DNA from: Macrostomum lignano | Lineage: Eukaryota | NCBI GenBank assembly: GCA_002269645.1 | Contig: NIVC01003300.1 | Location: forward strand, 1-64,000 | Direction of reading: 5' to 3' | DNA length: 64,000 nt | Shown: positions 16,828 through 56,782 of the stretch, one piece after another | How positions within the stretch are numbered: the stretch's first letter is position 1 | Layout: each line of letters opens with the position of its first letter | Made by a program: the position numbers and the translations under genes | The notes under the pieces: model-generated | The model's input: the letters and a program-made list of their open reading frames with translations, nothing else | What the model was told of the DNA's origin: nothing | The model's database searches: none

Positions 16828-16849
16828 CGCTAGTTAGTTAGCTAGTTAA

Positions 16850-16925
<76 letters not shown>

Positions 16926-29486: not shown

Positions 29487-30130
29487 AGGCAGCTCCGTTG
29501 TCGGGCAGGCCTGCTGCTGCAGCCTTGGCCGCTGCTGCAATGTCAGCCCTGCGGCACAGGACGAGGGATGGGTCGGGCGGTTAGCACTGACGCATTCAAG
29601 GGAAAGCAGAGGAGAAGAGGGAGAGTGTGGATCGAGTTGGCCTACAAATAGCACTGATAAGGGCCCGAGCTTGCCTGCGTGCAGGCCTCTGTGAGCCTGT
29701 CACCCTGTGCGAAAATTCGACCCGATAATGCGTGTCTCTCTCTCACTGCGGTCTCTCACCCGCCAGGGGGGGGGGGGTTAGACAGGCGAGTTGGCCAGGT
29801 AATGGAAACGAAAATTCTTTGCCCCACTATATAAAATGATCGGCGCGCTTAGCCGGTCAGCTAAACTTTCGCCATATCTTCTGCGTATACTAAATATTAA
29901 GCCGATGTTAATGAACTGGGTTGGGGCAGGCAGGTTGCGCACGAGAGCCAGTGTCAGTGAATACCTGCTAACAACTCCATTAAATAATTTTTTGCCAATC
30001 TTATCCAGGCTGCTATCGATCAAGATTAGGAATAATTGATAGCAACGACTGGGATTGAATCGTGGAGGTACAATTCGATCTGGATCGAAGATAATGCATT
30101 TCGTTTTGCTAAATTTTACTGAAATTGAGC

Positions 30131-34244: not shown

Positions 34245-35460
34245 GGGAGTCAGATCCCAAAACTGAGGGATTGAGATCCCAAACTGAGGGATTGAGATCC
34301 CAAACTGAAGGAATAAGATCCCAAACTGAGGGATTGAGATCCCAAACTGAGGGATTGAGTTCCCAAACTGAGGGATTGAGATCCCAAACTGAGGGATTGA
34401 GATCCCAAACTGAGGGATTGAGTTCCCAAACTGAAGGATTGAGATCTTAAACTGAGGGATTGAGATCCCAAACTGAGGGATTAAGTTTCCAAACTGAAGG
34501 ATTAAGATCCCAAACTGAGGGATAAAGATCCCAAACTGAGGGATTAAGATCCCAAACTGAAGGATTGAGATCCCAAACTGAGGGATTGATATCCCAAACT
34601 GAGGGATTAAGATCCCAAACCGAGGGATTGAGATATCAAACTGAGGGATTAAGATCCCAAACTGAGGGATTGAGATACCAAACTGAGGGATTAAGATCTC
34701 AAACTAAGGGATTGAGATCCCAAACTGAGGGATTAAGATCTCAAACTAAGGGATTGAGATCCCAAACTGAGGGAATAAGATCCCAAACTAAGGGATTGAT
34801 ATCCCAAACCGAAGGAATAAGATCCCAAACTGAGAGATTGAGATCCCAAACTGAGGGAATTAGTTCCCAATAATAATAACAATAATAATAGTTACGCCCC
34901 ACGCCAGCCACAGAAGTGGCCAAAAGGGGGGGGGGCGTCAAATCGCGCGTTTCAGAGCTAGGTCTCTAATGTGCTTCACACCGGCACCGGCCGCCTGGCT
35001 GGGTGCTCGCGCATCTTCAAAAAGGCGGTCGACGTAGCGGGCTGATCGTCCCTGGCCACGCCTGCGCGGTCCCTGCGGTGTCCACAGCAGGAGTTCCCAA
35101 ACTGAGGGAATTAGTTCCCAAACTGAGGGAATTAGTTCCCAAACTGAGGGAATTAGTTCCCAAACTGAGGGAATTAGTTCCCAAACTGAGGGAATTAGTT
35201 CCCAAACCGAGGGAATTAGTTCCCAAACTGAGGGAATTAGTTCCCAAACCGAGGGAATTAGTTCACAAACTGAGGGAATTAGTTCCCAAACTGAGGGAAT
35301 TAGTTCCCAAACTGAGGGAATTAGTTACCAGACTGAGAGATTAAGATCATAAACTGGGGGGTGGAGATCCCAAACTAATGATTGAGATCCTAAACTGAGG
35401 GATTTAAATTCCAAACTGAGGGGTTAAGATCCCAAAATGAGAATAACATAAGATCCCAAA
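34245..35460. repeat. 21-bp minisatellite TGAGGGATTGAGATCCCAAAC, split by a LINE fragment
   Basis: Arrays at about 34245-34870 and 35092-35460. Confidence 0.95.
34871..35091 (-). mobile_element. 5'-truncated RTE-type non-LTR retroposon (221 bp)
   Basis: Minus strand encodes LLLWTPQGPRRRGQGRSARYVDRLFEDA...IRDLALKRAI* (35093-34938), then a (TAT)n-like tail. 9-bp TSD AGTTCCCAA at 34862-34870 and 35092-35100. Confidence 0.85.
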
Positions 35461-37936
35461 TCCTAAACAAAGCATATATCCCATAGAATTTTAGAGATCT
35501 ATTCTAAAATGCAAAACAGCCCAGATGCATCTAGAATCACAGATGACTCAATCCGACAGCTTTAGAAATGCGATCTCAAATGACTGAACCTGTAAATAGC
35601 GCAGTTTACAGGCAGCGCTGGCCAGAGTTCACACAAGTCATTAATTTTTATTGCATTCTCAGGTTTGGCCTGCTGTGTCGATTGAAAACCGGGAGGGGGT
35701 AGGGCGGGTTGAAGCCGCCAGGATTAAACTCCCAAAACTAATGAGCAGAGGAATGAGCCTAGGGGAGCATTGCAGCTTGTTAGAGCACCCGCCGCGCACG
35801 CAAACATGAGCAATGAAATTGAGCTGGCAAAAAGCATTGAGACACCATGCGATGAAATACTGTCTCAAAAATAAAAGTTTTTAGCATTTAGGAAAAGAAA
35901 TATTCTAAACTGCAGAAAGGGGAGGCACTCGATCCCACAAATTCATCACAACAAAATTCACGAATTCAAAGTGGTGGAGCACTATTTTTGATGTTATATT
36001 TCCTTTAAGTTTCGATGAATTGAGTCTAACAACATCACTGGGGCGATCATTTTCACGCAGAATTTAATTTTTTTTACAACGTTTGACACGTTGACATTCC
36101 TACAATAAATGAGCTCTGCTCTCGGGGTTGCACTAGAAAATTGGGCTATTTAGCCCCGTTATTGCAGCTGGCCTTGTCTGCAGAGCAATAAAATATTTTA
36201 TGCCAAAAGCCTGGCGCCAAACAACCCAAAACTTATGCAATTGAGCGCTTCGTGTGCATCAATTTCTAGAAAATACAAATTGCCATTATTAGCCTACTAA
36301 TAGTAGAACTATTTGAATTTCGGGACAAGTGATTAATAAAACAAAAAAATAAACTCAAGATTTCAAGTATTAGTTAAGTGTTGCTATACATATATTATCA
36401 CCAATGTTGTTGACAATCATAAAACTTCAAAATCCAGAAATTTTAATGATTTGGCCATCTGCAGGGTCATGGCCACTGTGCCACTTATGCTTAAAATTGC
36501 TAAAATTATCATAGAAATTTAAGCTGTCTCATTAATTTCTAGAAATATAAATGGCATTGTCCAAGCACAACATAATATAACCAATAAATATTTCAAGGAG
36601 ATAAAATGAACTGAATTAAGTATATACTAGCTATGCATAAAGTATTCAAATTTCATGCAAAATATTAGGCTAAACATAGATACTAGAATAACTAGATAGA
36701 CAACTCAGTATATCTGCATACAAGCTACTTTCAGTTTAGTAGTAACTGCTGAATCAGTAGTACCAAATTTCAATTAATACCTAGTACAAAATGTATTTTA
36801 GAACTTAAAGTTACTTATTGATTTTTTGTTAAAAATTTAATGACTTGTAAAGCAAAAAACTATTTAAGTTTAAATAATTTTCATTATAATGTAAAGTTTT
36901 CTTATAATATATAGCATATAGGCCTGACTATATATAGGGTGACTATGCATTTTTGGACATAAAAAATAAGGAGAAATAAGGAAAATGAGAAATATATCTA
37001 GTATAAGTAGATTTGCATTGAAATGAAAAAGATTGAAGACAATATTTTCCTTGAAGCAGAATGTTTATAATATAGAAACATTAAAATAATGCTCCAATTA
37101 TTATATTTAAATTATTAGTAGTTATATAGTCATGTAGGAATTAGCATGCTTTGTTAGTATATGCCTAGTTAATTTGAATTAAATTAAAAAGTAGGCTTGC
37201 CTGCTTCATTGAATATTTTAAGAAGTCTAGCTATTAGCTTCACTAATAGCAAGCTTTGCAAAATGCCATTTCTCACCCAGGTTGCACTCTAGTTTCTTGA
37301 TCTGCTCTTGCTTATGTTTCTAGTTTCTGCTAGAGGCTGCTAGCTAAGTAGCTGCCTTTCACTGCTCCTTTTGAGCTGACTAGCATAGGGATTATATAAC
37401 TTATATATATTTTTTATCATAGCCAGTATGAATTGTATTTTAGGATCCAACCTAGCATACTAAATTGCTTTGTAAATGATTCTTTAAGCAATGAGATTCA
37501 ATTTAGATAGATTTTCAACTATTAAATTCTTGTTAACCAGAACTACTTTCAACCAAAGCTTGGCCAATGGATAAAACCAATATAATTTAGATAGGCTTAG
37601 CTAATATACTCATACCATGCCAATAGTTCTTGGCACTTTTGAATGTATTTTTGTCATTGAAAAGTTATGAGTAAAAGTTGTCTATATAAGAATTGGCTAT
37701 TGTAAATTGTTAGAATGTCTTATATACTTTTGAATCAGTGTATAGAATAGCAAACTATACCCTGGCAATATTAGCTGCTTGGTGCATGATCTAGCTAGCT
37801 TCAGATAGCAATATTGGGCAAAGTCCTAGTTTCTTGCATTAAATTATCTTTATACTAAATTTCAAACTAACAAACCTGCAAACCAAAGCATACTTTAAAT
37901 ATGTAAGTCTTTAAACTGTGGAGGTCTTAAAAGTAC

Positions 37937-38559
37937 TACGAGAAGCGTACTGAAAGTTTTGAGATATGACTGACTCATAAGTCACAATTGCACAAATTTT
38001 TATGTACATACTCTACCACCCTTAAGATGATTGGGTATAAATTTTCAGTCTTTTCACTCTTGTCAATTTTTCACAATCACTCTTTAAAGTCAATACCCCC
38101 TACCAAACTGTACTTGCTCCAATAACAAACTGCAACTTTTGTGCCATGATAGTTAATGACTAGCACCAGACTTTGTGGCCTGCTGCTGCACCACGACAAT
38201 GCCAGTGCACACACGGCTGCTGCAACATTGGCATTTCTAGCCAAGAATAGAGTCAAGTTAGTGACGCATCCCGCTTATTCCCCTGACCTGGCACCTTGCG
38301 ACTTCTTTCTCTTCCCTTTGGTGATGAACCAACTGCGTGGGACTTGGTTTGAGAGCCCTGGAGCAGCAAGATTCGAGTTTGAGTGGGTGGTGTCAACAGT
38401 GCCAAAAGAACAGTGGGCTGGAGCCTAGACGGAGTGGTTTCACCAGATGAGGAAATGCGTACAAGCTGGCGACAACTACTTAAAAAAATTGTGATAGAAA
38501 TTTAGCTTCAGACATTTATGGTTTTGATGTATCCCAAAACTTTCAGTATGCCCTGTGTA
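37937..38559 (+). mobile_element. Internally deleted mariner element
   Basis: TA-flanked TIRs of about 27 bp (CGAGAAGCGTACTGAAAGTTTTGAGAT / ATCCCAAAACTTTCAGTATGCCCTGTG). Relic LHHDNASAH...HPAYSPDLAPCDFFLFP at 38156-38470. Confidence 0.9.
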
Positions 38560-38641
38560 TTATACAATATAGTAACAGGTATAGGTTGCCTAGTACAAAA
38601 AGTTGTCAAAGCACTTTTCTAGGTAGAGTTGGCACTAGAGG

Positions 38642-38845
38642 CAGTGGCAGATCTATAATTTCATTTGGTGAGAGAGGAAACAGTCCAAGTTTGGGGCACC
38701 AACATATTAGGGATACCAACTTTTAAGCAAGGGGCACAAATATGCATGTGGAGGGCAAAAATCAAGCCTTTTGGAAGCACAATATATTCTATCAAGGTAT
38801 TTTGGAGAAAGGAGACAACTGTGCCCTACCCTAAATCTGCCCTTG
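38642..38845. mobile_element. hAT-type MITE (204 bp)
   Basis: TIRs CAGTGGCAGATCTA / TAAATCTGCCCTTG; perfect 8-bp TSD ACTAGAGG at 38634-38641 and 38846-38853. Confidence 0.85.
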
Positions 38846-40354
38846 ACTAGAGGAACTAGCAAAAGTAGAAACTAAAAAGGTTTGTCACAGGTGCCATTTT
38901 ATAAAATTTAGATGTAAACTTTATAGTAAACTTTACTTTATTAGTAAACTTTAGGCCTACCTTCAGTAAAACTTTAGTAATGCTTTAGCAAACACATTTT
39001 GGTTTGTTTATTTGAAATTTAATATCAAAATAATTTAATGTGAGAAACTAAGATATTGTCTAGCATTAATAAAAATGTAAAGTACTCATCATAAAGATTA
39101 GCATGATCTGAAATTAGCTAATATAGCATGGTATTTAATCTCTTAGCTCGTATAACTAACTTAAAAAAGGGAATGAGATTCTTACTTGGCCAAAAAAGAA
39201 CTAAATATTTAGATAAAAGGGTGTTCTTTTGTTATGTGATCTTTTCTATTGCACTGTTTTGTTATATAATCCTTTTCCAATTGGGCTATTTACTGCTATT
39301 GATTTATTATATAAAATCCCTAGCAAAAAGTCTAAAGGGGATTGTATAACAAAATTATACGATTATAATAATGAATCAACAGCAATGCACAGCACAAGTA
39401 AAAATGGATTGTATAATGATATAATGCTAATATGAGTCTTCAAAAATCAAAATAAAGAAAAAATAGAGATAGATAAAGAGAAAAATCCAAAATTCATTAG
39501 AAAAAAGAATAAAAGAGACTATAGGCACCCTGTATATAATAAAATAAGCTATATTTATTATAGAATTATAGGGATAAATAAGCCTTGTTAGACTAGAGAA
39601 CAATTAAATATAAGTTTTAGTCTGAATCAGCAATCAGCTTTGTTGCTATAATTTATACTAAATTTCTATTAGAATTATCAGCAATTTATTCAAACAAAAA
39701 TCTAATTTTTAGTGTATAATATAAACATTATATCAAAAAAAAAACAATGTGGTTTTTTCCATTGTTAAGAAAGTTGAAAGTTGTTAACAATATATTCCAT
39801 CTGTAGTAGGGCATTATTTTAGGAATGGGAAATTTTGCAGGTTCAAATATGCTTTTACCCTACTATCAGTAGTTTCAACCCGGGGAAATAATTAGCGCGG
39901 GGGTAAGTGGATAAAATTGGGGTTCCTTTAGAACTACAGAGCAGTTGGGCTCTTGGGAAAGAAAAACCTGTTTGTTGGAGTGTCTTCTCCTGTCCTCGAA
40001 CTTGAATTTCGCAAGGAAAGTGGTAAGAAGGGGAAATAAAAGAAATATAATTTAGGCTTGCACAGAGGAGTCTTGCCTCTAATTCTATAACTGGGAGTCT
40101 TGCCCAAGCACTATAGCGGGAATAAGGAAATAGGGAATTAATGTAAAAAGCAAACTAACTTTTGTACCATAATTCACTTCTTTGTTAAAACTTTTTGTGT
40201 TAACTAACTTATCGGTGTCCTGACTCAGTTCTTTAAAACTAAAGCTAGAATTAGGGAACAGCAGGAACCTGGTGGCAGCGATTCTACCAAATCTCAAATC
40301 AGTACAGCAGATAATAATCCACTCATAATCCTTAGCAAATAAGAAACCAGTAGC

Positions 40355-41403
40355 TTAGCCGCGGTTACACGCCCATACCACATCATTAAGAAAGTTCTCA
40401 TGTTTTCTATAACTTTTTTCCAAACTGAGTTTTTTTGAAATATAGAAGTACTTTAAGAAACAAAGTACTTCATTGAGCCTATTATCTAGGGCTTCCTTAT
40501 CAGTGAAAGTTTTGCTCTTTAAGGCATTGGTCAAGGCCAAGAAAAGATAGTAGTTGCCAAGTGCTAGGTTGGGGAAATATGTAGGATGAGGCACCAGTTT
40601 CCAGCCAAGGTCCAGTAACTTTTGGCAAATCACCTTGGTTGTGATTTGAAGGGGTGGGCATTATTGTGCAGGAATTGGACTAGGCCATGATTTGGTTGCT
40701 TCTATGCAATGGTGGCAGCCAATCTATCCAGTTGTTGATAGTATAGGTTGGCCATAATCAATGCATTGGGTAGTAGCACTTCATAGAGGATCACACCTTT
40801 ATAGTCCCACCAAACATACAGCATCACCTTGCAAAGGTGGAGTCCAGCTTTAGGCTGTGGCTCAGGGGTCACGTCAGCATCCAACTACAACTATTGATGC
40901 TTGATGTTCATATATAAGTACCATTTTTTATTGCCAGTAACAATTGACTTCAGGCAATTATGCAGGAGAGTAGTGGCCACCTCTGCCCTACATTTGCAGT
41001 CCCAGTTAGACAATTCACATGCTTGGGTGCAACCTAGGGATTCACCCGGCCGTTTCTATTGGCAACACACACATGTAAGTCGCTATTGGACAGAATAGTA
41101 GTCACGTGACTTCTCTCAGCCAATAGCGACTTACATGTGTGTGTTGCCAATAGAAATGGCCGAGTGATTCCCAAGGTTGCGCATGTATGACAATTCATGG
41201 GGTACTTATTAAGTCAACTTGTGCACTTTTTTCACTTGATGCAAGTGAGTGGCAATAGTTTGATGGTCTATCCCAAAGACTTGTGCCAACTCACATTTGG
41301 TTTGTTGGGGATCAGCTTTAATGAGTGTGTACAGATAGTTATTCTTTAGAAACATTTTTTTAGAAAATGTTGTATTTGAAAGTAGGTCCCTATGGTAATT
41401 CAT
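40355..41403 (-). mobile_element. Decayed mariner transposase
   Basis: HTH ADPQQTKCELAQVFGIDHQTI; *VPHEL; IVTGNKKW; PKAGLH..KVMLYVWWDYKGV; LHNNAHP; PHPTYFPNLALGNYYLF. These are mariner WVPHEL / D,D34D / YSPDL motifs with substitutions. Termini not located. Confidence 0.9.
41018..41188. mobile_element. Foldback MITE (171 bp) with 9-bp TSD, possibly Mutator-type
   Basis: Inverted arms of about 60 bp around AGTCACGTGACT; TSD GACAATTCA at 41009-41017 and 41189-41197. Interrupts the mariner ORF just after VPHEL. Confidence 0.85.
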
Positions 41404-43771
41404 TTAAACATATATACTATTAGAAATGTTTTAAATAGTATAAATATTTTTTTTTCAATTGTTTAAAACCATACTAAAAGGCCTATAAATATATAAGCAG
41501 CTAGCAAGAAAAGAATCAACTTGTTACTTGGTCCAGTAGCTATGAATTGGAATTTGAATCATTTAAAATCTAAAGCATTATTACTGACTTAGTTATTTGG
41601 AAGCTTTAAAAGCCCCAAGATTGGGAGAACTGACTCCATTCTTAGAGAATGAGACATCTAGATTTAGAATATAAGAAATCACCTTAGAAGGAAGAAATCC
41701 TACCATAGCCCATAGGGTAGAATAGTCTGGACTCGGTCTAAGAAACCTACCTCAGGGTAAGAATACCCAATAAATAAGCTGTGACCCTCTGATCCTGGGA
41801 ATGCCTACGACTAAGAGAAAACCTTTAGAGGAATAGAATAGGATATTTATAAGAAAAGAGTAGACAAGTACTATAAGACCACTTAGGCTAGAAGTAAAGT
41901 ACATATATATACATGTAGATAAATTTATGCACTACCAATAAAAGTATATAATGGTAAGATCATTTCAGAAGATAGAAATTATCCCTATTACAACTTTTGG
42001 TATCAGTAGCAGAATAGTTTAGATAGACTGTCACTGGATCATCTTGTTGCCAGATTGTCTAGAAGCCAAGAAGCAGAGCAGCACCCCTACCACAAATTTT
42101 CTATAAAGTTCTAGATTTGAATTTTCTAGAAACCGCGAGAAATCTTGACAACAGAATGTAAGTACTGGAAACCTGAAATTCATAAGAAAATCTTAGACTT
42201 AGGTTGAGCCTGAGGGTGAGTTAGGACCCAAAGTAGGGCAAAGATAAAAATAACAAAATAGGGACTTCTTGAACTTTAATTATACTTAAGTAAGTGGTTT
42301 AGTGGTGCAAAAAGATCAAGAATTAATATACTTAAAACTCTTCTACTGCATCTAGATTACTAGACATTATAATCGATTGAAGACTAGATAGGCCTACATA
42401 AAATCAATCTCCATGAAGAATCTTGTCACACTAAAATCCCTACCCGATGCTCTATTTGTTCAACGAAAATAGATTATATAAATGATGAAGAAAACTTAGA
42501 CGAAAGATATAAAATGTTTTCTGTAGTTCTAGAGCTGCAGAGCACCTCCATTTAGAATACTTAACTTCCAGCCAGCATTCTCGGAAATTCCATTGATTTA
42601 AATGGTTCACTAAATAAAAGCTAAGACATGATAATATTTTCTACACTCTTTAGACTCTAATTTTATACACATATTGATTTTTAAAAATAGCAAATGTTAT
42701 TTTATTCATTTTGTACATATTTTTTTAGATTTATCACACGGAAATACACATTCCTGTAAAGTTGTAAACCACACCTTTCTTCGCAGCAATTCAATTTCCA
42801 TCAATTTAGTCGATTTTCCTGTTTTGATCTCCTCAAGTCGTCGAGATGCTTCCTTATCTGCTATAAGCCAGATATTTTCTGTTGTTTTCCTTATTTGGAA
42901 TTCTGTAATATTTTTTCTTACTTCCTCGTTCCTTATTTTCTATGAATAGTCCTGTGATGCCTTTATGCTCAAGACTGCTAGTGTTTCCTGGTTCCTGAAG
43001 GAGACTATTATCTCCTATATTTGTGGCCTAATTATATTCAATGCAAGCTGTGGTTTAAAAAAAGATTATTAAATATTATCAAATAAAAACTATTAGTAGG
43101 TTTTTATTTTTAAAAAATGTTTTTATATTCCTTAATTACTATTAATAATATTATTATGTGAAAAATCCAAATACTTTAATAACTTTATTGGTGTATGTTT
43201 TCAATAAAAAGACTTGTTCTTGCTAAAAAAATTAGTAATTGTTGCAAATTATATGTATAAAAATCTAATCTAGTTCTATGAAATATTTTATATATTGATT
43301 ATGCGTAAGACTTAATCAAGTAATAAAAAATAGATTTTTGTTTTATTATATCATAGTTTAATTTACAAAACCTTTAAATCTTTATATTAGGTAAATTGTA
43401 AAGCCTACTTCAATAATTTTTGCCTAATTTTGTTTTTAAGCAAAAGTTGGCAAGCATATTTATAATCAAAAGTAAGTTAATATGCCAAATATAGTATGTT
43501 TATATATAATTAACATATTTTTTTCCTAAAGTGCTAAACTAACTATATTATACCAGATCAATAAACATAAAAGCTTGAGAATTATAGTTATTAAAAAGTG
43601 AAAGTATATAAGATGTGAATCAGGAAAAGAAGTGTCATTTGTAAATAGATTTCAAATCTTTAAAGCCAAAACTGTTATCAAATTTTCCCCTTCAGAGCTT
43701 GCAGACAGTCATAGGAGACTAACTATTTGCTAGATAACAAACAAGTCTAAAAAAACAACAGTTCAAGCTTA

Positions 43772-46700
43772 ATGGCGGACTTGGACACAGACAGTTCGAG
43801 CTCGGGTGGCTGGTCCAACTCTGGTGGTGAGGCTGAAGCGCCGGCGGCTGCTGCGGCAGAGGCTGCGGTTGCAGTGGCGGTGGCGACTGCGGCGGCGGAG
43901 TCGGCCAGCAGCTCCTCCAATGCCGACCCAGAAGAGGCTTTGGCAGTGGCGGCGGCTGCTGAATCTGAGGCGGACAGCAGCGAAGAGGACGAAGGCAACC
44001 CGTTCGACGCGATTCGCGAAGGCCTGGACCGGCTGGCCGGCAGCGAGGCAGAGCGCCAATTCGTGGCCGACTTCGTCTCCAGCGACGCTGTGGCGCTGCT
44101 GTGCGACCTGACGGAGTTCCTGGACACCGAGCTGCAGACATTCCGGCTAAGCGACCAGTTCAAGGCCAGCGTGGCCGGCCTGTCCGAGCTGGTGGCCGAA
44201 GCCATAGAGTCCATCGATGCTGAACGGCTGTCTGGCGAGTTTCAGGTGAGCGTTGAATGATTAGTCAAGGCAGCAGTTTTTATATTTGTCCTCCAATTTC
44301 CCAATTTTGCTGCTCGGCCTCGAAAAAATTTGACGCAAAAGTTTTTTGCCCTTAAAATGAAACTTCAAAAACAAAATTATTTTTAAAGAGCAGATTTTTT
44401 TCTTCAAAATAAGACAATTGGCAATAAAATCTGTTAGTTACATAATCTGGGATCTCGGGATCTAGAGCCATAGCATCCGGGATTGGGGATTTAGAGTCAT
44501 AGCATCCGGGATCTTGGGGATTTAGAGTCACAGCATCCGGGATCTGGGATCTAGAGTCATAGCATCCGGGATCTGGGGATCTAGAGTCATAGCATCCGGG
44601 ATCTGGGGATTTAGAGTAATAGCATCCAGGATCTGGGAATCTAGAGTCATAGCATCCGGGATCTGGGGATCTAGAGTCATAGCATCCGGGATCTGGGGAT
44701 TTAGAGTCATAGCATCCAGGATCTGGGGATCTAGAGTCATAGCATCCGGGATCTGGGGATCTAGAGTCATAGCATCCGGGATTTAGGGATTTGGAGCCAT
44801 TGCATCCGGGATCTGGGGATCTAGAGCCATAGCATCCGGGATCTGGAGATTTTGAGCCATATCATCATAAATCTGGTAACTGAAATGATTCTCACCTGTC
44901 ATTACTCGCCATCAACCCGCACTCGCAGCCGGACGTCTCTGAGCTGACGAGCCTGCTATCCTCGATGAAGCTGTCCAGCTTCCTAGCCAGCATGGCCGAG
45001 GTCGCCAAAGGCGAGTACGAGCCGGAGCTTGGCGAGCTGCCAGAAGATTTCTTCGATGAGTACAGCTCGGGCAGCGAGGACAGCAACTCGGTGGATTCAT
45101 CCGACAGGGAAAGTGAGTCGTCGGTTAAGAGGGGGGAGTACTTGACTTACTTGACTTGACTTAGCTGCAGGGTGGTCCGTAGACACAGCGGGGAGGCAAG
45201 GGTTACCCGATCCGCTAGCCCCTGAAGGCCCTCAAACAGGCAGAGGCGTGGGGCCAGTCAAGGCGGTCCGCCAGTCCAGCGTTATCTTCTGTAGGGAAGA
45301 AAGAGGCTCGTCTTGTCGCCCGGAGGAGCCGGATGAGCCGTGGGATGCTGTCGGGCTGGCAGACCTCGTCAATAGACGGGTTCGGCCCGATGTAGCGTAG
45401 CCGGTCTCTGGTAAAGAAAGGGCAGTGACAGACAAAGTGCTGAGCATCTTTATTGTTCGCAAAAGGGCAAAGTTCACTCTCGAGGTCGCCTGGGAGGAAG
45501 CAGTGCTGTGAAGTGTTTGTTTGTCTTTAGCTTTTAGCGGAGGGGTGTTTTCAAAAGTGCGGAAGACGGGTGGCGGGCTACCAAACGACTCTCCTTTCTT
45601 TAAACACGAATTGATTCTCCACAAAGGCTTCCGCGTCCCTTCGAACTCCGCGGCCGCCGCCTCCGCCGCCTCACCCCTGGTCGCCGGGGGCGTCAACGGC
45701 GACGCTCCGGACACGACGCGGTCGCGACCGAGCGGCAAGCAGGTCAGCTACATCGGCCTGCCGCCTGAGCAGCCGCAGCCGCCGCCTCAGCAACGGCATT
45801 CCTCTGTGCAATTGCGCAACCCCAGCGGCTTAGGCGGAGCCTCGAACTCTGCCTATCGGCATAGCAACCTGGTGGAACGCCAGGTGTCAATCAATAAGGA
45901 TCCCAGCGAGCCGCTCGGCTTCACCGTGGCCAGAGAATACGTGGCCCAGTACGACAAGCAGATGATCATGGTTGAGCGGGTCATGATGGACGGCCCCATC
46001 GATAGGGAGGGCGTGTTTCAGGTGAGTCTCGGCTCGCTCGACAAACCCGAATGTTCACAGATTAACACAAGCATTGTTTAAAAACCCAAACCTTTAAAAT
46101 CCGAGTGTTTACGAACCCAGAATATTCACAACTTTTAATGTTCACAAACCTAACACTATAGTCCACATCCCTAAATCTTCACAAACCTGAATTTCCACAT
46201 CCCCAAATCTTCACAAACCTGAATTTTCACATCCCCAAATCTTCACAAACCTGAACGTTCACATCCCCATGTCTTCACAAACCTGAATGTTTACATCCCC
46301 AAATGTTCATAAACCTGAATGTTCATATGCCAGAATGTTCACAAACCTGACCTTTCACATCCCCAAGTCTTCACAAACCTGAATGTTTACATCCCCAAGT
46401 CTTCACAAACCTGAACGTTCACATGCCCAAATCTTCAAAAATCGGCAACTTTTCGAACCGCAGGTGGGCGACCTGATCACAGAGATCAATGAGCAGCCGC
46501 TGGAGTCGCCAGAAGCTCTTCAACGAATGCTTCGCCAGCTGTCGGGCAACGTGACCTTCACTGTCCTCACTCCAGCCTTTAAAAGTGTGCGATCTGACCA
46601 CAGCACCGTGTACCTTCGAGCCTGCTTCGAGTACCGGCCGGACTTTGACACCCTGCTGCCCACCCGGGATCTGGGACTCCGCTTCGTCTGCGGCGACATC

Positions 46701-48779
46701 CTGCAGGTGGTGAACCAGGAGGACCCGAACTACTGGCAGGCGCGGCTGGTTGGCAAGCCCGGCAAGACCAAGCTGATCCCCTCGCAGCAGCTCGAGGAGA
46801 AGCGCAAGGCATTCATCCCCGTGCGCAAGGATGCGCAGGCCCGGCAGGCCAGTGGTGAGCGAGGAATTTGGGAGGGAGTGGCTGAGCACACTGTATTAGT
46901 AATTTAGCTTTGAAGTTGTTATACCCATATATATTAAATTATTTGTCCTATTTTAATCTTGAATAAATTATTCCATTTTTAAGTTGCAAAGACGTAAACT
47001 TTACATAGATTTAACCTTGATTTTCTGTTATTGCTTTGCTATCTACTATGAGTAGCCCGTTGAAAATGTTACCGTGACAAAAATCGCTAAAAAGTCATTG
47101 CAAACAACGCACGAGTGACTCTCTAGCGATTCTAGAGCGACTCTTGTAACCGTTTAGCGACTCCAAAAAAAACGATTGTAATACACTGGAAAGGCGAATC
47201 GAGTTGTATAAAGTCGTCAAAGAGTCTTCATGTTAGCGCTGAACTCTCTACTAACTCAAGTAGACTAAATAGAGTTGCTGTAAAAGCAAAATGCGATTCT
47301 AATGCACAAAGTGACTCCAGCACGCCTAGCTTAGCTAATTTTTTTATTTCCCACTTATATTTATTCATGGCACCTGATTATAGCGCACCTATTATATTAT
47401 CAGCTCAGCTAATTCGCTTGGCAACGCACTAATACGCACGGCCGCCCCCCCTCTCTCTTCCTCGTCAATCCCCCTGCCCGAATCCAGCGGCCTCCTGCGC
47501 CCCACTTGCAGCTGGCAAGCAGCCGGGCAAGGGCAGAGTGAAGAAGACCATCTTCAGCGCCGAGACTGCAGCCGAGTTCGACCGGGCGGAGATCTGGACC
47601 TACGAGGAGGTGGTGATGTGCCCGCCGGAGCCGCTCACCTGCCTGGTGCTGGTCGGGCCGCCCGGCATCGGCCGGCGCACGGTGAAGAAGTGGCTGTGCC
47701 AGCGCCTGCCAGACAGGTTCGCCGAGGTCAAGCCGGTCAGCAGCAACTCCAGAAGGCGAGACGGCGCCGCCCATGCCAGCAAGGAGGCCATGCGGAAGGC
47801 CATCGCCGCCGGCGAGTTCCTGGAATACGGCGACTTCCAAGGCGAGCTAATCGGAGTCCGACTGGCCGACATTGAGGCCGTGTCGCGGCCGCGGTTGCAG
47901 GAGGACGACGGTGAGGAGGAGCGGCTGACGGCGGTGGTGGACTGCCTGTGCCCGTCCATCAAGCTGCTGCGCAGCGGCCGCTTCAAGCCCTACGTGGTGT
48001 TCATGGCCGCGCCAGCCGTGGAGATCCAGCAGGTGCGTGGGCGGTTTTATATTTGAATTCTGAGACTTGTCATCGCGTTCTAAGAATTCGCCTTCTGATA
48101 GAATGGAACTGCTAGCCATTTAAATATTGGGTTTTAAGTTATTCTTGCATTTTTTCTTTCTTAAGTAATCGGGCTTCAAATCCCCCTGTAAAGATTTTAT
48201 TCGAATCCTAAAGTTTATAATCGGCCTTCAAATTCTTAAAATCTGTCTTAGAATTTTTAATCAAGACTTAATCAAGAATCGGCCTTCAAATCTTGTGTCA
48301 AGAATCGGCTTTCAAATCTTTAGTGAAGAATCGGCCTTTAAGTCCTTAATCAAGAATCGGCCTTTAAAAATTTAGTTAATAATCGGCCTTCAAATATTTA
48401 GTCAAGAATCGGCCTTCAAATCTTCAGTCAAAAATCGGCCTTCAAATCCTGATTCAAACAGCTGTTCTATACTCAGTTAGAATCGGCATTCCCCATGACT
48501 GTGACTTTTAATGCATCCCCCTTGCAGGTGCTGCAGGACAAGGGCCGATCGCAGGGCGTCCTGAGCCGCACGCGGACCCAAGAGGAGATGCAGCGCGCGG
48601 TGAACAAGAGCATCCGGATGGAGCGGCTGTACCGTCCCCTGTTCGACCTGGCCGTTCTGTGCGACAACTTGGAGTCGGTCTATCAGAAAATTGTCACCTG
48701 TGTTGAATCTGTGGAGGCCAACGGCAGGTGGCTGCCCGCCAGTTGGGTGAACGACATGGAGGACCAGCCCACTGCTTGA
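43772..48779 (+). CDS. MAGUK p55-subfamily (MPP/PALS-like) scaffold: L27-PDZ-SH3-GK, about 738 aa, 6 exons
   Basis: Exons 43772-44245, 44929-45112, 45627-46021, 46464-46854, 47512-48032 and 48528-48779; all introns GT-AG with phases 0,1,0,1,0. L27 ELTSLLSS..LSSFLASMAEVAKGEYEP; PDZ KDPSEPLGFTV..GDLITEIN; SH3 YLRACFEY..DILQVVNQEDPNYWQAR..LIPSQQLEEKR; GK LVLVGPPGIGRRTV..FLEYG; C-terminal WLPASWV. Exact orthologue not assignable. Confidence 0.88.
44445..44870. repeat. 30-bp minisatellite in MAGUK intron 1
   Basis: Unit GCATCCGGGATCTGGGGATCTAGAGTCATA, about 14 copies. Confidence 0.95.
46115..46440. repeat. 32-bp minisatellite in MAGUK intron 3
   Basis: TTCACAAACCTGAATTTCCACATCCCCAAATC; starts at 46178, 46210 and 46242. 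Confidence 0.9.
48160..48450. repeat. 26-bp diverged minisatellite in MAGUK intron 5
   Basis: AATCGGC cores at 48303, 48329, 48355, 48381, 48407 and 48433. Confidence 0.85.
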
Positions 48780-51655: not shown

Positions 51656-52359
51656 CGCTCGTAGCTTCGCTAAAACGACAATTAGCAATCTGTAACGAAG
51701 TTAAAGTTCTGATCTTAAGTATATACACGAATAAATCCTAAAACTTGTGCAGCACACAAAGCTTTATTTACTGTACATCATATGTATATCATTTCCCAGT
51801 GGCTATGCGTCTGTCATAAAAACTTATTTTCTATACCAAAAGCCACCTTCATAGCATTAGAAAATACGATCGCGTACGAGTACTTTTTAGTGGCTCAGTC
51901 AGCTGGCTCTCTGAGCTTGGGCGCCAAGAATTAGCTATACTGTTCCTACCCAAAAATATTCGCTTCTTACAGACTTACAGCACTACATTCCCAAATTCTT
52001 CTCATTATAATTATGTGAGCGTATGCAGTGTCTGCAGCTATCCTGCACTCCGTTTACTGTATTGAATAGACATTCCGTTTTAATGGCAATTTTTGCTACA
52101 CGATTCAAGTTGCTGATACTTTTTGTATTAAATATAACGAAAAGGGAGATGATTTTATCAAAGAATCCAGCCATTGCAGCCAGGAATGATTTACTGACAA
52201 TATTTTGTCTGTATCATCTCTACTTGTTAGTTTTTTGCTATTTTAAGATGCATTTATAGTTAATTCTTTATTAAGTGGTTGAGTAAGCTATATGTACGTA
52301 AATTCATCAAGAATTAGACAACTTTTTTGCGTCGACGGACTTCTCTAAGTTTTCTACAC

Positions 52360-53790
52360 AAGTATACAACAAAAAATACACGGTCAGCGTCACAGGGTTC
52401 GCCTCAGGGCCAGGTCGCGAACGAACACCACGCCGCCGGCCGAATCCGGGGCGCCGTCGTTAGTGAACTAGTCGACGAAACGCCGAGTGCGCGCCTGTCC
52501 CCGCCGGTAGGGTGCTTGCCGCATCAGCAGCACCTGCACTGGCTGTGGGCAGGTTACTTAGACAGACCAGGCCGGCGCGGTGATACAAAGCCGCGTTGGT
52601 CACTCGCTCGTATCCGATCTTGAAGGCGGCGCCCAGCAGGCCAGCGTGCGCCGCGTCAACTTGTTGCTCGAGCGACTCCGTCAGCGTCCAGGTCTCGGCG
52701 TTGTACAGCAGGACGGTCTCGGCCACCGCCTGGAAAAACGCCGCCCTCTAGCGGTCAGGTACGGCCTTGGACTGCAGGACTGTCCTCACAGAGCGAAGAC
52801 AGCCCAGGCAAGCCCGTGGCGACGCCGCAAATCCTCGCGGACGCCGGGATCCAGACCGCCGAGGTAGACGAACTGCTGACAACGCGGAAGCTCTGTCGCC
52901 TTTCCATCAGCACAAAATTGCACGCCGGCACATCTGGCGCGCAGAGTACGACGGTTTTCTGCGTGTTGACCACGAGGCCGACACTCGCCGCAACATCAAA
53001 TGTAGTTTTTTGCAGTTGTCGCTGGGCGCATTCGACAGTTGAGGACAGCAGAGGGCGAGATCGTCGACATATAGCCAACCATGCTGAGCCGCCTCTCCGG
53101 TTGACGTCTACCCACGCGTCACCGCAACAGAAAGCCGGCGTCGGTCAAGCACCAGAACTAACAGGAACGGCGCGAACGTATCTCTTTGAAGCAACCCGGA
53201 GGACGTCTCAAAGAAGTCTGATAGGCCGTCCGGTGTTGGAACAGCAGCTTGCGTATCGTGGTACATCGCCATGATAGCGGAGATACGCCGCTCTTTGGCA
53301 CGTTGTACGCTCGGAGCTCCTTTAGGAGCACAGAACTGACGACCGAGTCGAATGCCTTCTTGAAATATATGAAGATGAAAATCAGGATCGATTGGCGTAC
53401 CCGTGCCTCCTCCATGACTCGGCGAAGAGCTGGGATCTACGTCACTGTGCTGCGATGGGACGATGAGTTCTTCTCAGGACGCAAGTACGGATCCAGCACC
53501 GTTGCTACAACCCCGTTACCAGCAGCATCGAGTTGAATAACTTCGCAGCGCAGGAGTGAAGGCAGATGCCTCGATACTTCTCAAGCTTTATGGTGCCCGG
53601 CAATTCTTAGGAATTGCGACGATGTACGTCGTGGTCCATTCTTTGGGTGCTCCTCACCGAAGAGCACGCGATTCATCACTCTGCATGGCGACCTCCCTCA
53701 AGCTGGCCACACAATGATGCGCAGCCCCTCGATGGGCATGGGCACTGCACCTCGTCCGGACCCAGCACTTTCCCGCCTGGTGGCTGGTGA
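52360..53790 (-). mobile_element. Degenerate RTE-type LINE (reverse transcriptase remnant)
   Basis: Frameshifted fragments IYFKKAFDSV, GLVVNTQKT, ETVLLYNAETWTLT..; ends RRGQARTRRFVD*..VRDLALRRTL* at 52390. Confidence 0.88.
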
Positions 53791-56782
53791 CATCAAGCAT
53801 GTGTGTATGTATACAGTAGTGCATTATCATTTACATTTATAAGAGTGATCTACATATTTAACTGAATAAAATTTGAGCTTAGTGCAACATGACCTATAAA
53901 TGCATCATTCACATGAATGTTTCATTCACATGACTCATTGAATAGTTTGCTCTAACATCTTACTTGATTGCACAGTCAGTGTTCAGTGTAACGTCCCAAT
54001 CTTAGCTGACGATTGAGTGATGTTACATATCGTGCATCGCGCTTTGCCTATAATGCGAGTAGTGAGTGAAGACGCAGTCGTCCCCAAATTAATTGAATCT
54101 ATCTTAAAACACAAGAGAGAGTGAGTAATGTACATGTACCAGTTAATGTACTAGTTGTGGGACGATGGAGCCAGTAAGTAGTATAGAAAAAAAGGCGAGC
54201 GAAGCGAGAATTTTTTTCTATACTGCTTACTTTTGCGAAATCGTCCCTGATAAGATGTAACGTGGTTGCACACACTAAAAATGACGTTTTTCAACTTTGA
54301 AACGCTGCCAATAGAAAACGATACGACCGATTTACAAACAGTTTTTGCCAAAATGTGTCAAAGACCTAGCGCTATCGGATGCACAATAGTTGGTTGCCAT
54401 GGCAACGCGTTTTGGTTGCCATGGCAACCAAAAACTGCGTTTTTTCAACTTTTTCAAAAAATTTGATCTCAATTACAGCGGCAGGAAATTATGGCAGCGC
54501 TTAGTGAGTGTGCTCAATAGACGCGGGCATTTGAACGCTACAATGATCAGAAATGGATTTTTTGATTGTATTTTCACTTTACAGGTAAAAGTACAAAAAA
54601 CGTGTTTTTTGAGGTCGAAAAATTGGCATTTTTTTCAACTTTGCCTCACCGCAGCGAAAAGGACGCGCGATAGCGCGGCCTTTGAGCTGCCTCCTAGCGT
54701 TGACAACACTTTGGGCTGTTTGATGCGCTATAGTTTTTAGGGCTAAAATGTACTTTTCACATGGCTGCCTATCTGCTGTTTAAAAGTACAAATTTTTAGT
54801 GCACTTTTGTGAGGCCTATGGCGTCGAGATGGAAAACTTTATTTTTGCTGTTTTGTATACCAAATAACTCAAATGGATGTCTTTTAATCGGAAACATCGA
54901 GATTTGGCCGATTGGGCCATCAATAACCTGCCCAGGTGCCAAAGAGTGCCTAAAAACGACATTTTCGAAAAATTGGGTCACGTTTTTAAAAAGTAGTCCC
55001 AAAAAATAAGAAAGTGTTTTATGTTACGGTGTTGAGACTTTAACACAACGTGTCAAACATATGGAAATTTGTTTTCCTGAATTTTCTAAGCATTTGGACC
55101 TACCTGTGCGGAGCAGTGACCCGGAAACCAGGGAAAAAAGAGGCCGGGGGCTCTGCAGAAAATCAGACGTTGTTAAGAAAAATTTTTTAAAATGGGGCGA
55201 ATTTTTTTGAGTGTAGTGTCAGATTGTAGCCTATCGGAAGCCCGTTTGAACGACGTACGACACTCTGGAAAAAACCCCTGTTAACAGGTACTTTTTACCT
55301 GTTAATTGAAAAACGGCCCATTTTGGGGTACAAACTTTGGAGTCGAAAAATAAGAAATTTTGCGCACCGATTTTTCTGCATTTTCAATATTGTTTAGTCG
55401 AATAGCTAAAGTTTCACCGGTCATACGCCAATATGGCTGGAAAATTCGTATTTTTGAGCAAACTGCATCTGATTTTTAAAAATGCAATTTTTCGGTCAAT
55501 TTTTTGTACACGTTTTTCAACCTTGCCCGTACTGCAGCGAAAAGGACGCGCAATAGCGCGGCTTTTGAGCTGCTGCCTAATGTCAACAACACCTGGGGCT
55601 TTTAGATGCGCTATAATATTTTGGGCTAAAATGTACTTTTGACATGGCTGCCTATCTGCACTTTAAAAGTACAAACCGTTTGTGCACTTTAAAGAGGCTT
55701 ATCCTATACAGATGCAAATCTTGATTTTTTCAATTTTTCAACCCAAATCACTCAAATGGATGTCTTTTATTCGGAAATGCTGAGATCTGCTTGATTGGGC
55801 CATTCATTGCTGCTCTATATGGCTACAAGGGTCAAAAACAGTGTTTTTGAAAATTTGGGTCACGTTTTCAAAAAGTAGTCTCCAAAAATAAGAAAGTGTT
55901 TTTAGCTACGGTGTTGAGATTTTAACAAAACGTGTCAAACATATGGAAATTTGTTTTCCTAAATTTTCTAAGCATTTGGAGCTACCTGTGCGGAGCAGTG
56001 ACCCGGAAACCCGGGAAAAAAGAGGCCGGGGGACTCGACCAAAAAAGCATATGTTGTTAAAGAAAAATTTTTATTACTGGGCGAATTTTTTCAAGTGTGG
56101 TGTCAAATCGTAGCCCATCGGATGCCCGTTCGAATGGCGCAAGACACTCTGAAAAAAATACCTGTTAACAGGTACTTTTTACCTGTTAATTGAAAAACGG
56201 CCCTTTTGGGGTACAAACTTTGAAGTCGAAAAATAAGAAATTTTGCGCACCGATTTTTCTGCATTTTCAATATTGTTTAGTCGAATAGCTGAAGTTACAC
56301 CGGTCATACGCCAATATGGCTGGAAAATTCGTATTTTTGAGAAAATTGGCTCCGAATTTTGAGTAGGCCATTTTTGGGCAAATTTTGAGCATACTTTTGC
56401 TAATAACTCTGCATTGGCGAGACCTAGAGACTCAAGTTTGGTGTCTAAAAACAGCACTATGGATGCATTATGCAGCTAAATCAGTTTTGAAAACTGATTC
56501 TTAGGTTAACAGGTCTTAATACCTGTTTGATTACCTGTCAGAACAGGTGAAAATTAATATTTTGGCGCCTAGCAGCCGAAAAATTTGTTGACATAATTTG
56601 AAAATGCATTGGATGAATGCGCCTTAATGTTATCTCTGTAACGACATGTGACTCGTATTTTTAGGTAGAAGCGTTGCGATGCAACGAGCAGAAATGTATG
56701 AAAAAGCAGCAAAAATGGTAGAAATGGCTGCTATTAGCGATATTCGATATAAAATACGTGTACTATAGGCCAACTAAGTAAG

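What the first reader, a model, noticed from the sequence alone, without database searches (positions are those of the whole stretch)
36325..43640. RIP-like, one-directional C>T hypermutation of a transposon island in an animal genome
Seen: (a) I found no CpG in 36325-37935 (1.6 kb) and only two in about 38560-39860, whereas the similarly AT-rich element at 54-57 kb and DNA just left of 36300 are CpG-replete. (b) Hand count over 36601-36780 gives about 29 TpA versus 23 ApT. (c) Stops in the hAT-like relic (37665, 37587, 37484, 37460) are TAA/TAG, each one C>T step from CAA/CAG. (d) Mariner motifs have changed almost only by C>T or G>A: WVPHEL to TAA-VPHEL, TGDEKW to TGNKKW, HDNARP to HNNAHP, YSPDLAPSDYHL to YFPNLALGNYYL, and W to TAG at 38426. 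(e) Both MITE TIRs read GGCAGAT where such TIRs usually have GGCGGAT. Established: animal 5mC decay is CpG-focused, while CpA>TpA skew confined to repeats is the hallmark of fungal repeat-induced point mutation. Inference: a locally targeted mutagenic silencing system (dense CpG plus non-CpG methylation, or a deaminase) inactivates transposons here and stops short of the CpG-rich MAGUK exon at 43772. Ancestral states are inferred from family consensus motifs, not alignments.
Basis: partly seen in the sequence, partly recalled or inferred. Interest (0 to 1): 0.85.

Follow-up and report, generated by a model that had tools for sequence, protein, structure and literature searches.

The report
CpG-eroded dead-transposon patch, not RIP
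A 7-kb patch of dead DNA transposons, probably in a flatworm genome, has lost almost all its CpG sites and much of its G+C through C-to-T changes, which looks like long-term local DNA methylation plus ordinary decay and not a fungal-style RIP system.

Summary
The raw observation holds. Positions 36322-37938 have 0 CpG against 33.6 expected. The whole island has 49 against 195 (o/e 0.25), while non-satellite DNA elsewhere in the window has o/e 0.45-1.56.

I aligned the mariner relic (40378-41400, minus strand) to an intact relative and four outgroups. 80 of 115 polarised substitutions are G:C>A:T transitions, and 32 of 34 ancestral CpGs were destroyed.

A LINE relic 11 kb away serves as a control. 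It has the same A>G rate (0.030 vs 0.031) and the same transversion rate (0.047 vs 0.040). It shows no CpG effect (0.075 at CpG, 0.078 elsewhere).

So the island has a local C>T excess: about 6.6x at CpG and about 2.2x at non-CpG sites.

The excess is CpG-dominated. There is no CpA preference and the RIP indices are negative. Both strands are hit, and other substitutions and indels are present.

Homologues point to Macrostomum, which the literature says keeps DNMT1 and DNMT3.

Best reading: patch-specific germline 5mC decay plus AT-biased erosion. The modest non-CpG excess, with its WpC bias, is an open lead. Interest is moderate.

The parts
36322..37938 (.). CpG-free, AT-rich block (GC 0.29) of unidentified origin.
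   Evidence: 0 CpG against 33.6 expected, GpC o/e 2.12, TpG+CpA o/e 1.13. No Pfam hit in six frames at E<=1.
37810..37876 (.). Left arm of a 67-nt inverted repeat. It may be a terminal repeat of an older element that hosts the two insertions listed below.
   Evidence: the repeat finder I2, 79% complementary to 39001-39067. blastn gives 85% over 53 nt.
39001..39067 (.). Right arm of the same 67-nt inverted repeat.
37945..38551 (+). Internally deleted Tc1/mariner-type element with 22-nt terminal inverted repeats. It carries a C-terminal transposase fragment (ORF 38156-38428: HHDNASAH...YSPDLAPCDFFLF). It is younger and only partly CpG-eroded.
   Evidence: I7 arms 37945-37966 and 38530-38551, 91% complementary. 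Weak Pfam DDE_3 hit, E=1.9e-4. tblastn with mariner proteins. 11 CpG, o/e 0.39, TpG+CpA o/e 1.41.
38647..38841 (.). Its status as a mobile element is unverified.
   Evidence: The ends were read. There are 0 CpG against 8.3 expected. No second copy in the window and no obvious target-site duplication.
38471..39880 (.). Second CpG-poor, AT-rich block.
   Evidence: 2 CpG against 29.8 expected.
40378..41400 (-). Mariner relic. It is 5'-truncated or degenerate, and has several stops and one frameshift. This is the element used for the polarised substitution spectrum.
   Evidence: Pfam Transposase_1, E=5.9e-16. 56% aa and 72% nt identity to intact P0001/L001. Spectrum. CpG o/e 0.04 and TpG+CpA o/e 1.37 in 40372-41028.
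41016..41186 (.). Palindromic MITE inserted into the mariner relic. It is flanked by an 8-bp target-site duplication (41008-41015 AGACAATT, 41187-41194 TGACAATT), which is hAT-like. It is younger and still holds 7 CpG.
   Evidence: I1 arms of 61 nt, 93% complementary. It appears as an insertion relative to L001-L006. Ends and duplication read. CpG o/e 0.68.
41400..43700 (.). AT-rich, CpG-poor block of unidentified origin that runs up to the exon.
   Evidence: 16 CpG against 48.8 expected, GC 0.29. GC is 0.20-0.23 in 43001-43750.
43772..44257 (+). GC- and CpG-rich ORF (162 aa) that bounds the island on the right. It is presumably the first coding exon of the downstream PDZ-SH3-guanylate-kinase (MAGUK) gene, but this is not verified.
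   Evidence: CpG becomes dense from 43776, o/e 0.95-1.1. No Pfam hit on this ORF, but PDZ, SH3 and GuK hits at 46383-48056.
52300..53800 (-). CONTROL, outside the island: a frameshifted LINE reverse-transcriptase relic in CpG-replete DNA.
   Evidence: Translation. Relatives P0121-P0124 and loci L007-L010. Spectrum. CpG o/e 1.15.

Best explanation
The island is an intergenic patch of nested, dead DNA transposons. It sits between satellite arrays and the first exon of a MAGUK gene, in a genome that is probably a macrostomid flatworm (Macrostomum lignano or a close relative).

Unlike the rest of the window, this patch has been CpG-methylated in the germ line for a long time. Spontaneous deamination of 5-methylcytosine turned nearly every CpG into TpG or CpA. 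This step is shown as a substitution pattern; the methylation itself is inferred.

Ordinary AT-biased C>T decay runs on top of that, at about twice the rate seen in a GC-rich control. The doubling is shown; its cause is inferred. The likely causes are easier strand opening or poorer repair in AT-rich, probably heterochromatic DNA, with some non-CpG methylation possible. This decay has driven G+C down to 0.20-0.33.

Younger insertions inside the patch (element A and the palindromic MITE) are only partly eroded.
For: 1. CpG is depleted and GpC is not. Island CpG o/e is 0.25 and GpC o/e is 1.4. The island is an outlier against all non-satellite DNA in the window (p=9e-9).

2. TpG+CpA is reciprocally in excess inside the recognisable elements, at 1.37-1.45.

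3. Polarised mariner lineage: the C>T rate per site is 0.468 at CpG and 0.162 at CpH (Fisher p=1e-7). 32 of 34 CpG dinucleotides were lost by a transition, and the split is symmetric (17 G>A, 13 C>T).

4. Control LINE relic 11 kb away: A>G 0.030 vs 0.031 and transversions 0.047 vs 0.040, so it is the same age. Its CpG rate is 0.075 and its CpH rate 0.078, and 24 of 159 CpGs were lost. CpG hypermutability is therefore confined to the patch. The result survives stricter outgroup rules, splitting by codon position and alignment-quality filters.

5. The neighbouring exons are CpG-replete, so this is not gene-body methylation.

6. Organism and enzymes. The named homologues are from Macrostomum lignano. 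M. lignano keeps DNMT1 and DNMT3 and has low-level 5mC (PMC11292947, PMC10658182, PMC9246332).

7. The CpH context profile has the same shape as in the control (CpA about equal to CpT, both above CpC), only about 2x higher.

8. CpG rates are known to rise as local GC falls (PMC3169530).
Against: No methylation data were available, so 5mC at this locus is inferred.

The organism assignment is indirect. The WW protein is only 74% identical to its M. lignano homologue in its conserved domain.

The test rests on one in-island element and one control.

CpG decay alone cannot explain the 2.2x non-CpG excess, its WpC bias (23/118 vs 12/190, p=7e-4; TpC 9/51 vs 4/101, p=0.01), or the marginal strand clustering (P=0.023).

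Part of each relic's branch predates insertion.

In the oldest blocks the TpG+CpA excess has faded to 1.06-1.13, so their history is extrapolated from the mariner.
Confidence: 0.62

Rival explanations
1. An enzymatic cytosine deaminase or a RIP-like process edits transposon DNA in the germ line. Candidates are an AID/APOBEC-like enzyme or a RID-type methyltransferase-driven process. This would produce C>T at both CpG and non-CpG sites in discrete blocks.
For: Non-CpG C>T is 2.2x above an equal-age control (CI 1.25-3.9). The excess is concentrated at C preceded by A or T: WpC OR 3.6 (p=7e-4) and TpC 0.18 vs 0.04 (p=0.01, uncorrected). C>T and G>A events cluster slightly by strand (runs per event 0.40 vs 0.51+-0.056, P=0.023), and there is none of this in the control. 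AID/APOBEC-like genes do exist in several invertebrate phyla (PMC5889660, PMC5956068).
Against: CpG is the main target and is hit symmetrically. CpA is not preferred over CpT (0.21 vs 0.18; CpH heterogeneity p=0.057). CpA/TpG dinucleotides are in excess and the RIP composite index is negative. G>A and C>T are nearly balanced (45 vs 35). The strand clustering disappears in the CpG-only and CpH-only subsets. 30% of substitutions are of other types. There is no second copy in the window. APOBEC-type editing was not found in DNA transposons or in 19 invertebrate genomes (PMC4866542).
Confidence: 0.1
2. The same methylation machinery also methylates non-CpG cytosines in the patch (DNMT3-type CpH methylation). 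The non-CpG C>T excess would then also be 5mC deamination.
For: The non-CpG excess coincides with the CpG-eroded patch. CpA is nominally the highest CpH context at 0.21. Non-CpG methylation has been reported as dominant in another flatworm, Taenia solium, as summarised in PMC10658182.
Against: The excess is a near-uniform doubling of CpA, CpT and CpC (2.2x, 1.8x, 2.0x) and not CpA-specific. It depends more on the 5' neighbour (W above S), which is not the known DNMT3 CpH signature (the latter point is from my own knowledge).
Confidence: 0.1
3. The difference is one of time, not place.
For: Present-day 5mC in M. lignano is reported as low (PMC11292947). Younger insertions inside the island keep more CpG: element A has o/e 0.39 and the palindromic MITE 0.68.
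Against: The mariner relic and the CpG-replete LINE relic have equal A>G and transversion divergence (0.054 vs 0.057 combined). Their CpG loss nevertheless differs at 94% vs 15%. Element A is already CpG-eroded with a TpG/CpA excess, which suggests the process continued.
Confidence: 0.08
4. No methylation is involved. A regional mutation or fixation bias alone produced the pattern, for example AT-rich DNA opening more easily, or a lack of GC-biased gene conversion.
For: The implied equilibrium GC is 0.16 from the mariner lineage and 0.30 from the control lineage. The W-neighbour effect fits strand opening.
Against: A bias without methylation does not explain why CpG mutates 3x faster than CpH within the same element, when CpG equals CpH in the control. 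A>G is not lower in the island (0.031 vs 0.030), as weaker biased gene conversion would predict.
Confidence: 0.05
5. Assembly artefact or contaminant segment.
For: None. It could not be tested without reads.
Against: The island is contiguous with host satellites and exons. It contains nested insertions with target-site duplications. Its mariner relic is a degraded member of a family, not foreign intact DNA.
Confidence: 0.03

Closest known systems
Germline 5mC-driven CpG decay of methylated DNA in mosaic invertebrate methylomes, including species that methylate transposons
   Same: CpG o/e is far below 1 while GpC is normal or high. There is an excess of TpG/CpA. CpG transitions are symmetric and far above CpH transitions. 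The boundaries against unmethylated-looking DNA (CpG o/e about 1) are sharp. DNMT1 and DNMT3 are reported in the putative host.
   Different: The footprint is on an intergenic transposon patch, not a gene body; the adjacent exons are CpG-replete. The rest of the 64-kb window shows no footprint at all, so methylation would be very sparse. There is an extra twofold non-CpG C>T excess. No methylome confirms any of this.
Fungal repeat-induced point mutation (RIP)
   Same: C:G>T:A transitions dominate, a repeat-derived block turns AT-rich, stop codons arise from CAA, CAG and TGG, and TpA is enriched relative to the rest of the window.
   Different: There is no CpA (or any single dinucleotide) preference apart from CpG. 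The substrate index (CpA+TpG)/(ApC+GpT) is 1.1-1.9, where RIP gives below 1.03. 30% of changes are other substitutions, and there are indels. No duplicated partner is seen. The genome is animal.
AID/APOBEC editing of retroelements and viruses
   Same: There is some excess of C>T at TpC or WpC, and weak same-strand clustering.
   Different: The target is a cut-and-paste DNA transposon. Both strands are hit about equally. CpG dominates. The clustering is marginal. No such editing is reported for invertebrates or DNA transposons (PMC4866542).
GC-dependent cytosine deamination (the strand-opening model of isochore evolution; CpG rates negatively correlated with local GC, PMC3169530)
   Same: C>T is higher in the AT-rich setting and at cytosines with A or T neighbours. 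The implied equilibrium GC is lower (0.16 vs 0.30).
   Different: The model was described for vertebrate genomes at larger scales. Here it would act on a 7-kb patch, and it was not tested directly.

Membership tests
Fungal-type RIP | Nearly all changes are C:G>T:A transitions. | tested here: not met
   80 of 115 polarised substitutions (70%). There are also 26 transversions, 9 A:T>G:C transitions, several indels and a frameshift.
Fungal-type RIP | Strong dinucleotide preference (CpA>TpA in Neurospora), giving a high TpA/ApT and a (CpA+TpG)/(ApC+GpT) below about 1.03. | tested here: not met
   CpA 0.21, CpT 0.18, CpC 0.09, CpG 0.47. CpA vs other CpH p=0.09. The substrate index is 1.1-1.9 across the island and the composite index is negative.
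Fungal-type RIP | Acts on duplicated sequences. | tested here: inconclusive
   No second copy of any island element within the 64-kb window. Genome-wide copy number is not testable here.
Fungal-type RIP | RID/DIM-2-type machinery in the genome. | not testable with these tools
   No access to the genome of origin.
5mC-deamination footprint of a methylated domain | CpG depletion without GpC depletion, beyond what base composition gives. | tested here: met
   CpG 49 vs 194.7 expected, GpC o/e 1.4. The island differs from the rest of the window at p=9e-9.
5mC-deamination footprint of a methylated domain | Excess of the products TpG and CpA. | tested here: met
   o/e 1.37-1.45 in the mariner relic and element A. 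It has faded to 1.06-1.13 in the oldest blocks.
5mC-deamination footprint of a methylated domain | Polarised CpG transition rate well above the CpH rate, symmetric on both strands, and absent from unmethylated control DNA. | tested here: met
   0.468 vs 0.162 in the island. 17 G>A and 13 C>T single hits among 34 CpGs. The control shows 0.075 vs 0.078.
5mC-deamination footprint of a methylated domain | Maintenance and de novo DNA methyltransferases present in the organism. | tested here: inconclusive
   The organism is inferred as Macrostomum from named homologues. DNMT1 and DNMT3 are reported for M. lignano (PMC11292947, PMC9246332). They were not checked in the genome of origin.
5mC-deamination footprint of a methylated domain | 5mC actually present on the DNA in germline cells. 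| not testable with these tools
   Needs bisulfite or nanopore data.
AID/APOBEC-type DNA editing | Strand-biased, clustered G>A (or C>T) runs. | tested here: inconclusive
   G>A 45 vs C>T 35 (p=0.07 given the available sites). Runs test P=0.023 for all events, 0.53 for CpH only and 0.34 for CpG only.
AID/APOBEC-type DNA editing | Enzyme-specific 5' motif (TpC, CpC or WRC). | tested here: inconclusive
   TpC 0.18, ApC 0.21, CpC 0.17, GpC 0.10. Relative to the control, TpC is 4.5x (p=0.01 uncorrected, 9 events).
AID/APOBEC-type DNA editing | Substrate is exposed single-stranded DNA of a reverse-transcribing element or virus. | tested here: not met
   The tested element is a mariner DNA transposon.
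mariner (Tc1/mariner superfamily) transposon, for 40378-41400 | Transposase with an HTH and a DD34D catalytic domain, homologous to mariner transposases. | tested here: met
   Pfam Transposase_1, E=5.9e-16. Collinear with the 339-aa intact P0001 from residue 69 onward. The catalytic motif HDNARP is degraded to HNNAHP.
   No Pfam family at E<=1 in any of six frames of 36300-37950.

The most novel reading that the evidence does not exclude
The twofold, WpC-biased, weakly strand-clustered non-CpG C>T excess is the trace of an active, locus-targeted cytosine-deaminating (or CpH-methylating) defence. It would act on DNA-transposon clusters in a flatworm germ line, making it an animal analogue of RIP layered on CpG methylation.
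Probability: 0.08. Interest if true: 0.85.

Novelty: new member of a known kind. Interest (0 to 1): 0.35.

Why it matters
[quoted passage not shown] Macrostomum is of interest because, unlike planarians and parasitic flatworms, it keeps DNMT1 and DNMT3.

This window gives an evolutionary footprint for that pattern. It suggests methylation there is sparse and aimed at particular transposon patches, not at gene bodies, and that it has lasted long enough to erase 94% of an element's CpGs.

That prediction can be tested directly with a methylome.

The window also shows how to separate true hypermutation from methylation decay: compare against an equal-age relic nearby.

The residual non-CpG excess is a small lead, worth checking genome-wide.

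Tried and rejected
1. Within-window paired copies of island elements. blastn found none, only the 67-nt inverted repeat.

2. A second in-island test with element A. A metagenome scan found relatives only 36-45% identical over their full length, too distant to polarise DNA changes.

3. hAT identity of 37200-37900. No Pfam hit.

4. My first argument was that the mariner spectrum simply matches the genome's equilibrium GC. I rejected it. Non-satellite DNA elsewhere in the window is 0.38-0.45 GC with CpG o/e about 1, and the control relic implies an equilibrium of 0.30 against 0.16 for the mariner.

5. The repeat pair 54150-55503 / 58135-59487 as a spectrum control. It is unpolarised and gives only Ts:Tv of about 1 (46:44, and 149:144 for the second pair). 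The LINE relic superseded it.

6. The first runs test (P=0.003) used a null that let both bases of a CpG mutate independently. With CpG pairs handled as units, P=0.023, and the signal is absent in the subsets.

7. The LINE 3' fragment at 34941-35102 belongs to a different subfamily and is too short. It only shows that CpG-rich DNA lies 1.2 kb left of the island.

8. Wasik et al. 2015 (PMC4603488), the primary source for M. lignano methylation, is not held in the library.

9. The top hits for the WW protein, from a fish and a protist, were low-complexity matches and were ignored for organism assignment.

Full report
**Observation.** The CpG desert is real. No CpG occurs between 36321 and 37939, and only two (39149, 39360) lie between 38471 and 39880. 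From base composition, 36322-37938 should hold 33.6 CpG and holds none, while GpC is over-represented (o/e 2.12). The whole island (36325-43640) has 49 CpG against 194.7 expected. I masked tandem repeats and scored 500-bp bins. The island bins have CpG o/e 0-0.63 and all other bins 0.45-1.56 (Mann-Whitney p=9e-9). The island is also the most AT-rich non-satellite DNA in the window, at GC 0.20-0.36 outside its two younger elements, against mostly 0.38-0.7 elsewhere.

The classical RIP indices fail, however. (CpA+TpG)/(ApC+GpT) is 1.1-1.9 across the island and TpG+CpA is at or above expectation.

**Anatomy.** The island is a nest of dead DNA transposons.
- A mariner relic lies on the minus strand at about 40378-41400 (Pfam Transposase_1, E=5.9e-16).
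- It is interrupted by a 171-bp palindromic MITE (41016-41186) with an 8-bp target-site duplication, which still carries 7 CpG.
- An internally deleted Tc1/mariner-type element with 22-nt terminal repeats sits at 37945-38551.
- The remaining blocks are unidentified. The 'hAT-like relic' gave no Pfam hit.
- On the right the island ends at a GC- and CpG-rich ORF (43772-44257), upstream of PDZ, SH3 and guanylate-kinase exons. On the left it abuts CpG-containing DNA and satellite arrays.

**The decisive test.** A protein search with the relic's conceptual translation found one close intact relative, P0001 (339 aa). Its 1375-bp contig is L001 (GC 0.50, CpG o/e 0.93). A second search gave outgroups 73-76% identical to P0001 (P0002-P0005), with DNA loci L002, L003, L004 and L006.

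In the six-sequence alignment I assigned changes to the relic lineage by parsimony. There are 115 substitutions over 643 sites: G>A 45, C>T 35, A>G 5, T>C 4 and 26 transversions. The C>T rate per site is 0.468 at CpG (36/77), 0.209 at CpA, 0.183 at CpT and 0.088 at CpC. CpG against CpH gives p=1e-7, and heterogeneity among CpH contexts gives p=0.057. Of 34 ancestral CpG dinucleotides, 32 were destroyed by a transition: 17 on the G, 13 on the C and 2 on both.

**Control.** A frameshifted LINE reverse-transcriptase relic lies at about 52300-53800 (minus strand) in CpG-replete DNA. Its relatives are L007 and L008 (sisters) and L009 and L010 (outgroups). They allowed the same analysis: 142 substitutions over 1307 sites. 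The rates are CpG C>T 0.075 (25/333), CpH C>T 0.078 (42/541; CpA 0.095, CpT 0.104, CpC 0.043), A>G 0.030 and transversions 0.047.

The two relics are therefore of equal age by every substitution class except C>T: A>G 0.031 vs 0.030, and transversions 0.040 vs 0.047. CpG loss, however, is 94% against 15%. Normalised to the other substitutions, the island shows a 6.6-fold excess of CpG transitions (bootstrap CI 3.8-12.7) and a 2.2-fold excess of non-CpG C>T (CI 1.25-3.9). The result holds under a stricter outgroup rule, at codon positions 1+2 and 3 separately, and after removing columns near gaps or in poorly matching stretches. Under those filters CpH stays at 1.7-1.9x, CpG at 7-13x, and A>G and transversions stay equal.

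**What the excess looks like.** It is dominated by CpG and symmetric on the two strands, which is the signature of 5-methylcytosine deamination. In the control, CpG mutates no faster than other cytosines, so CpG hypermutability is a property of the patch and not of the genome.

The non-CpG component keeps the shape of the background profile (CpA about equal to CpT, both above CpC) at about double the level. It is stronger at cytosines preceded by A or T: WpC 23/118 vs 12/190 (p=7e-4), TpC 9/51 vs 4/101 (p=0.01), with SpC not significant. Within CpG, WCG sites (27/45) were hit more than SCG sites (9/32).

C>T and G>A events are slightly clustered by strand (P=0.023, with a null that treats CpG pairs as units). 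The signal vanishes in the CpG-only and CpH-only subsets and is absent from the control.

**Organism and machinery.** The named homologues come from Macrostomum lignano. These are reverse-transcriptase fragments 68-84% identical to the LINE relic, and a WW-domain protein 74% identical in its conserved region to the window's 1054-aa ORF. The window's 46% GC and its load of satellites fit that genome as I remember it; this is my own knowledge and was not tested.

Reviews state that M. lignano keeps DNMT1 and DNMT3 and has low-level 5mC. [quoted passage not shown] The assignment is indirect, and the primary paper was not available.

**Interpretation.** The best-supported mechanism is long-term germline CpG methylation confined to this transposon patch, with 5mC deamination erasing the CpGs. 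The adjacent exons are CpG-replete, so this is not gene-body methylation.

An AT-biased C>T decay runs about twice as fast here as in the GC-rich control. The likely reason is that AT-rich, probably heterochromatic DNA opens more easily or is repaired less well. CpG rates are known to correlate negatively with local GC (PMC3169530).

The substitution patterns are shown. The methylation, its targeting and the cause of the non-CpG doubling are inferred.

**Rivals.**
- A deaminase or RIP-like process is not required. It is contradicted by the CpG dominance, the lack of a CpA preference, the near balance of the strands, the 30% share of other substitutions, and the absence of such editing in DNA transposons and invertebrates in a published screen (PMC4866542). 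The WpC bias and weak clustering keep it alive at about 0.1.
- Non-CpG methylation could account for the extra C>T. The uniform doubling argues against it, since that is not CpA-specific.
- A purely historical explanation (old DNA from an era of global methylation) is contradicted by the equal age of the two relics.
- A methylation-free regional bias cannot explain why CpG mutates three times faster than CpH only inside the patch.

**Limits.**
- The argument rests on one in-island element and one control.
- Parsimony with outgroups from other hosts can misassign some changes, although the same bias applies to the control.
- Part of each branch predates insertion.
- No reads, methylome or genome-wide data were available.
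- A second in-island test failed because element A has no close relatives in the collections.

**Verdict.** The RIP-like reading is not. This is a new instance of a known phenomenon, a methylation-decay footprint on transposons, in a lineage where the methylation landscape has not been described. It comes with a small unexplained non-CpG component that deserves a genome-wide look.

Noticed in passing
window 6141-6740, 8980-11981, 16321-16937 and about 20 further arrays: The tandem-repeat load is extreme: (ATCT)n for 600 bp, (AGTT)n for 3 kb, (GTTA)n for 600 bp, and many 17-53-bp minisatellites. TRF lists 50 rows. Several of the low-CpG stretches outside the island are simply CpG-free satellite monomers.
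   Followed up: partly
window 54150-57171 + 57170-58027, and 58135-60258 + 60351-62110: Two copies of a 2-3 kb AT-rich unit (93% and 81% identical segments, with an internal duplication in copy 1). Each is followed by an array of the same 52/53-bp GC-rich satellite. CpG o/e is 1.06-1.08 and differences between the copies have Ts:Tv of about 1. This may be a transposon with a satellite tail.
   Followed up: partly
whole window, strongest at 36322-37938: GpC is over-represented almost everywhere (o/e 1.4-1.6 in non-coding DNA, 2.1 in the oldest island block). This fits GpC being the cytosine context least prone to C>T in the mariner relic (0.10).
   Followed up: partly
window 41016-41186: A palindromic 171-bp MITE with 61-nt arms (93% complementary) and an 8-bp hAT-like target-site duplication, inserted into the mariner relic. 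Its four arm mismatches are two transversions, one CpG transition and one non-CpG transition.
   Followed up: yes
window 26490-29654 (minus strand): An uninterrupted 1054-aa ORF, GC 0.67-0.71. It has one WW domain and a long, charged, coiled-coil-like region. Its closest named homologue is a Macrostomum lignano WW-domain protein.
   Followed up: partly
window 1764-2201 and 5267-5779 (minus strand): Two paralogous ORFs that look secreted and carry a WSC domain (Pfam hit on the second, E=6.5e-13). They are 3.5 kb apart.
   Followed up: no
window 34941-35102 (minus strand): A short 3' fragment of a second LINE subfamily lies between two 21-bp satellite arrays. It is still CpG-rich and sits only 1.2 kb left of the island.
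   Followed up: partly
L001-L006, L007-L010: Intact relatives of both the mariner and the LINE turn up on short contigs of environmental metagenomes and unrelated sequencing runs. All have CpG o/e of about 1 and GC of 0.45-0.66. Their hosts are unknown.
   Followed up: no
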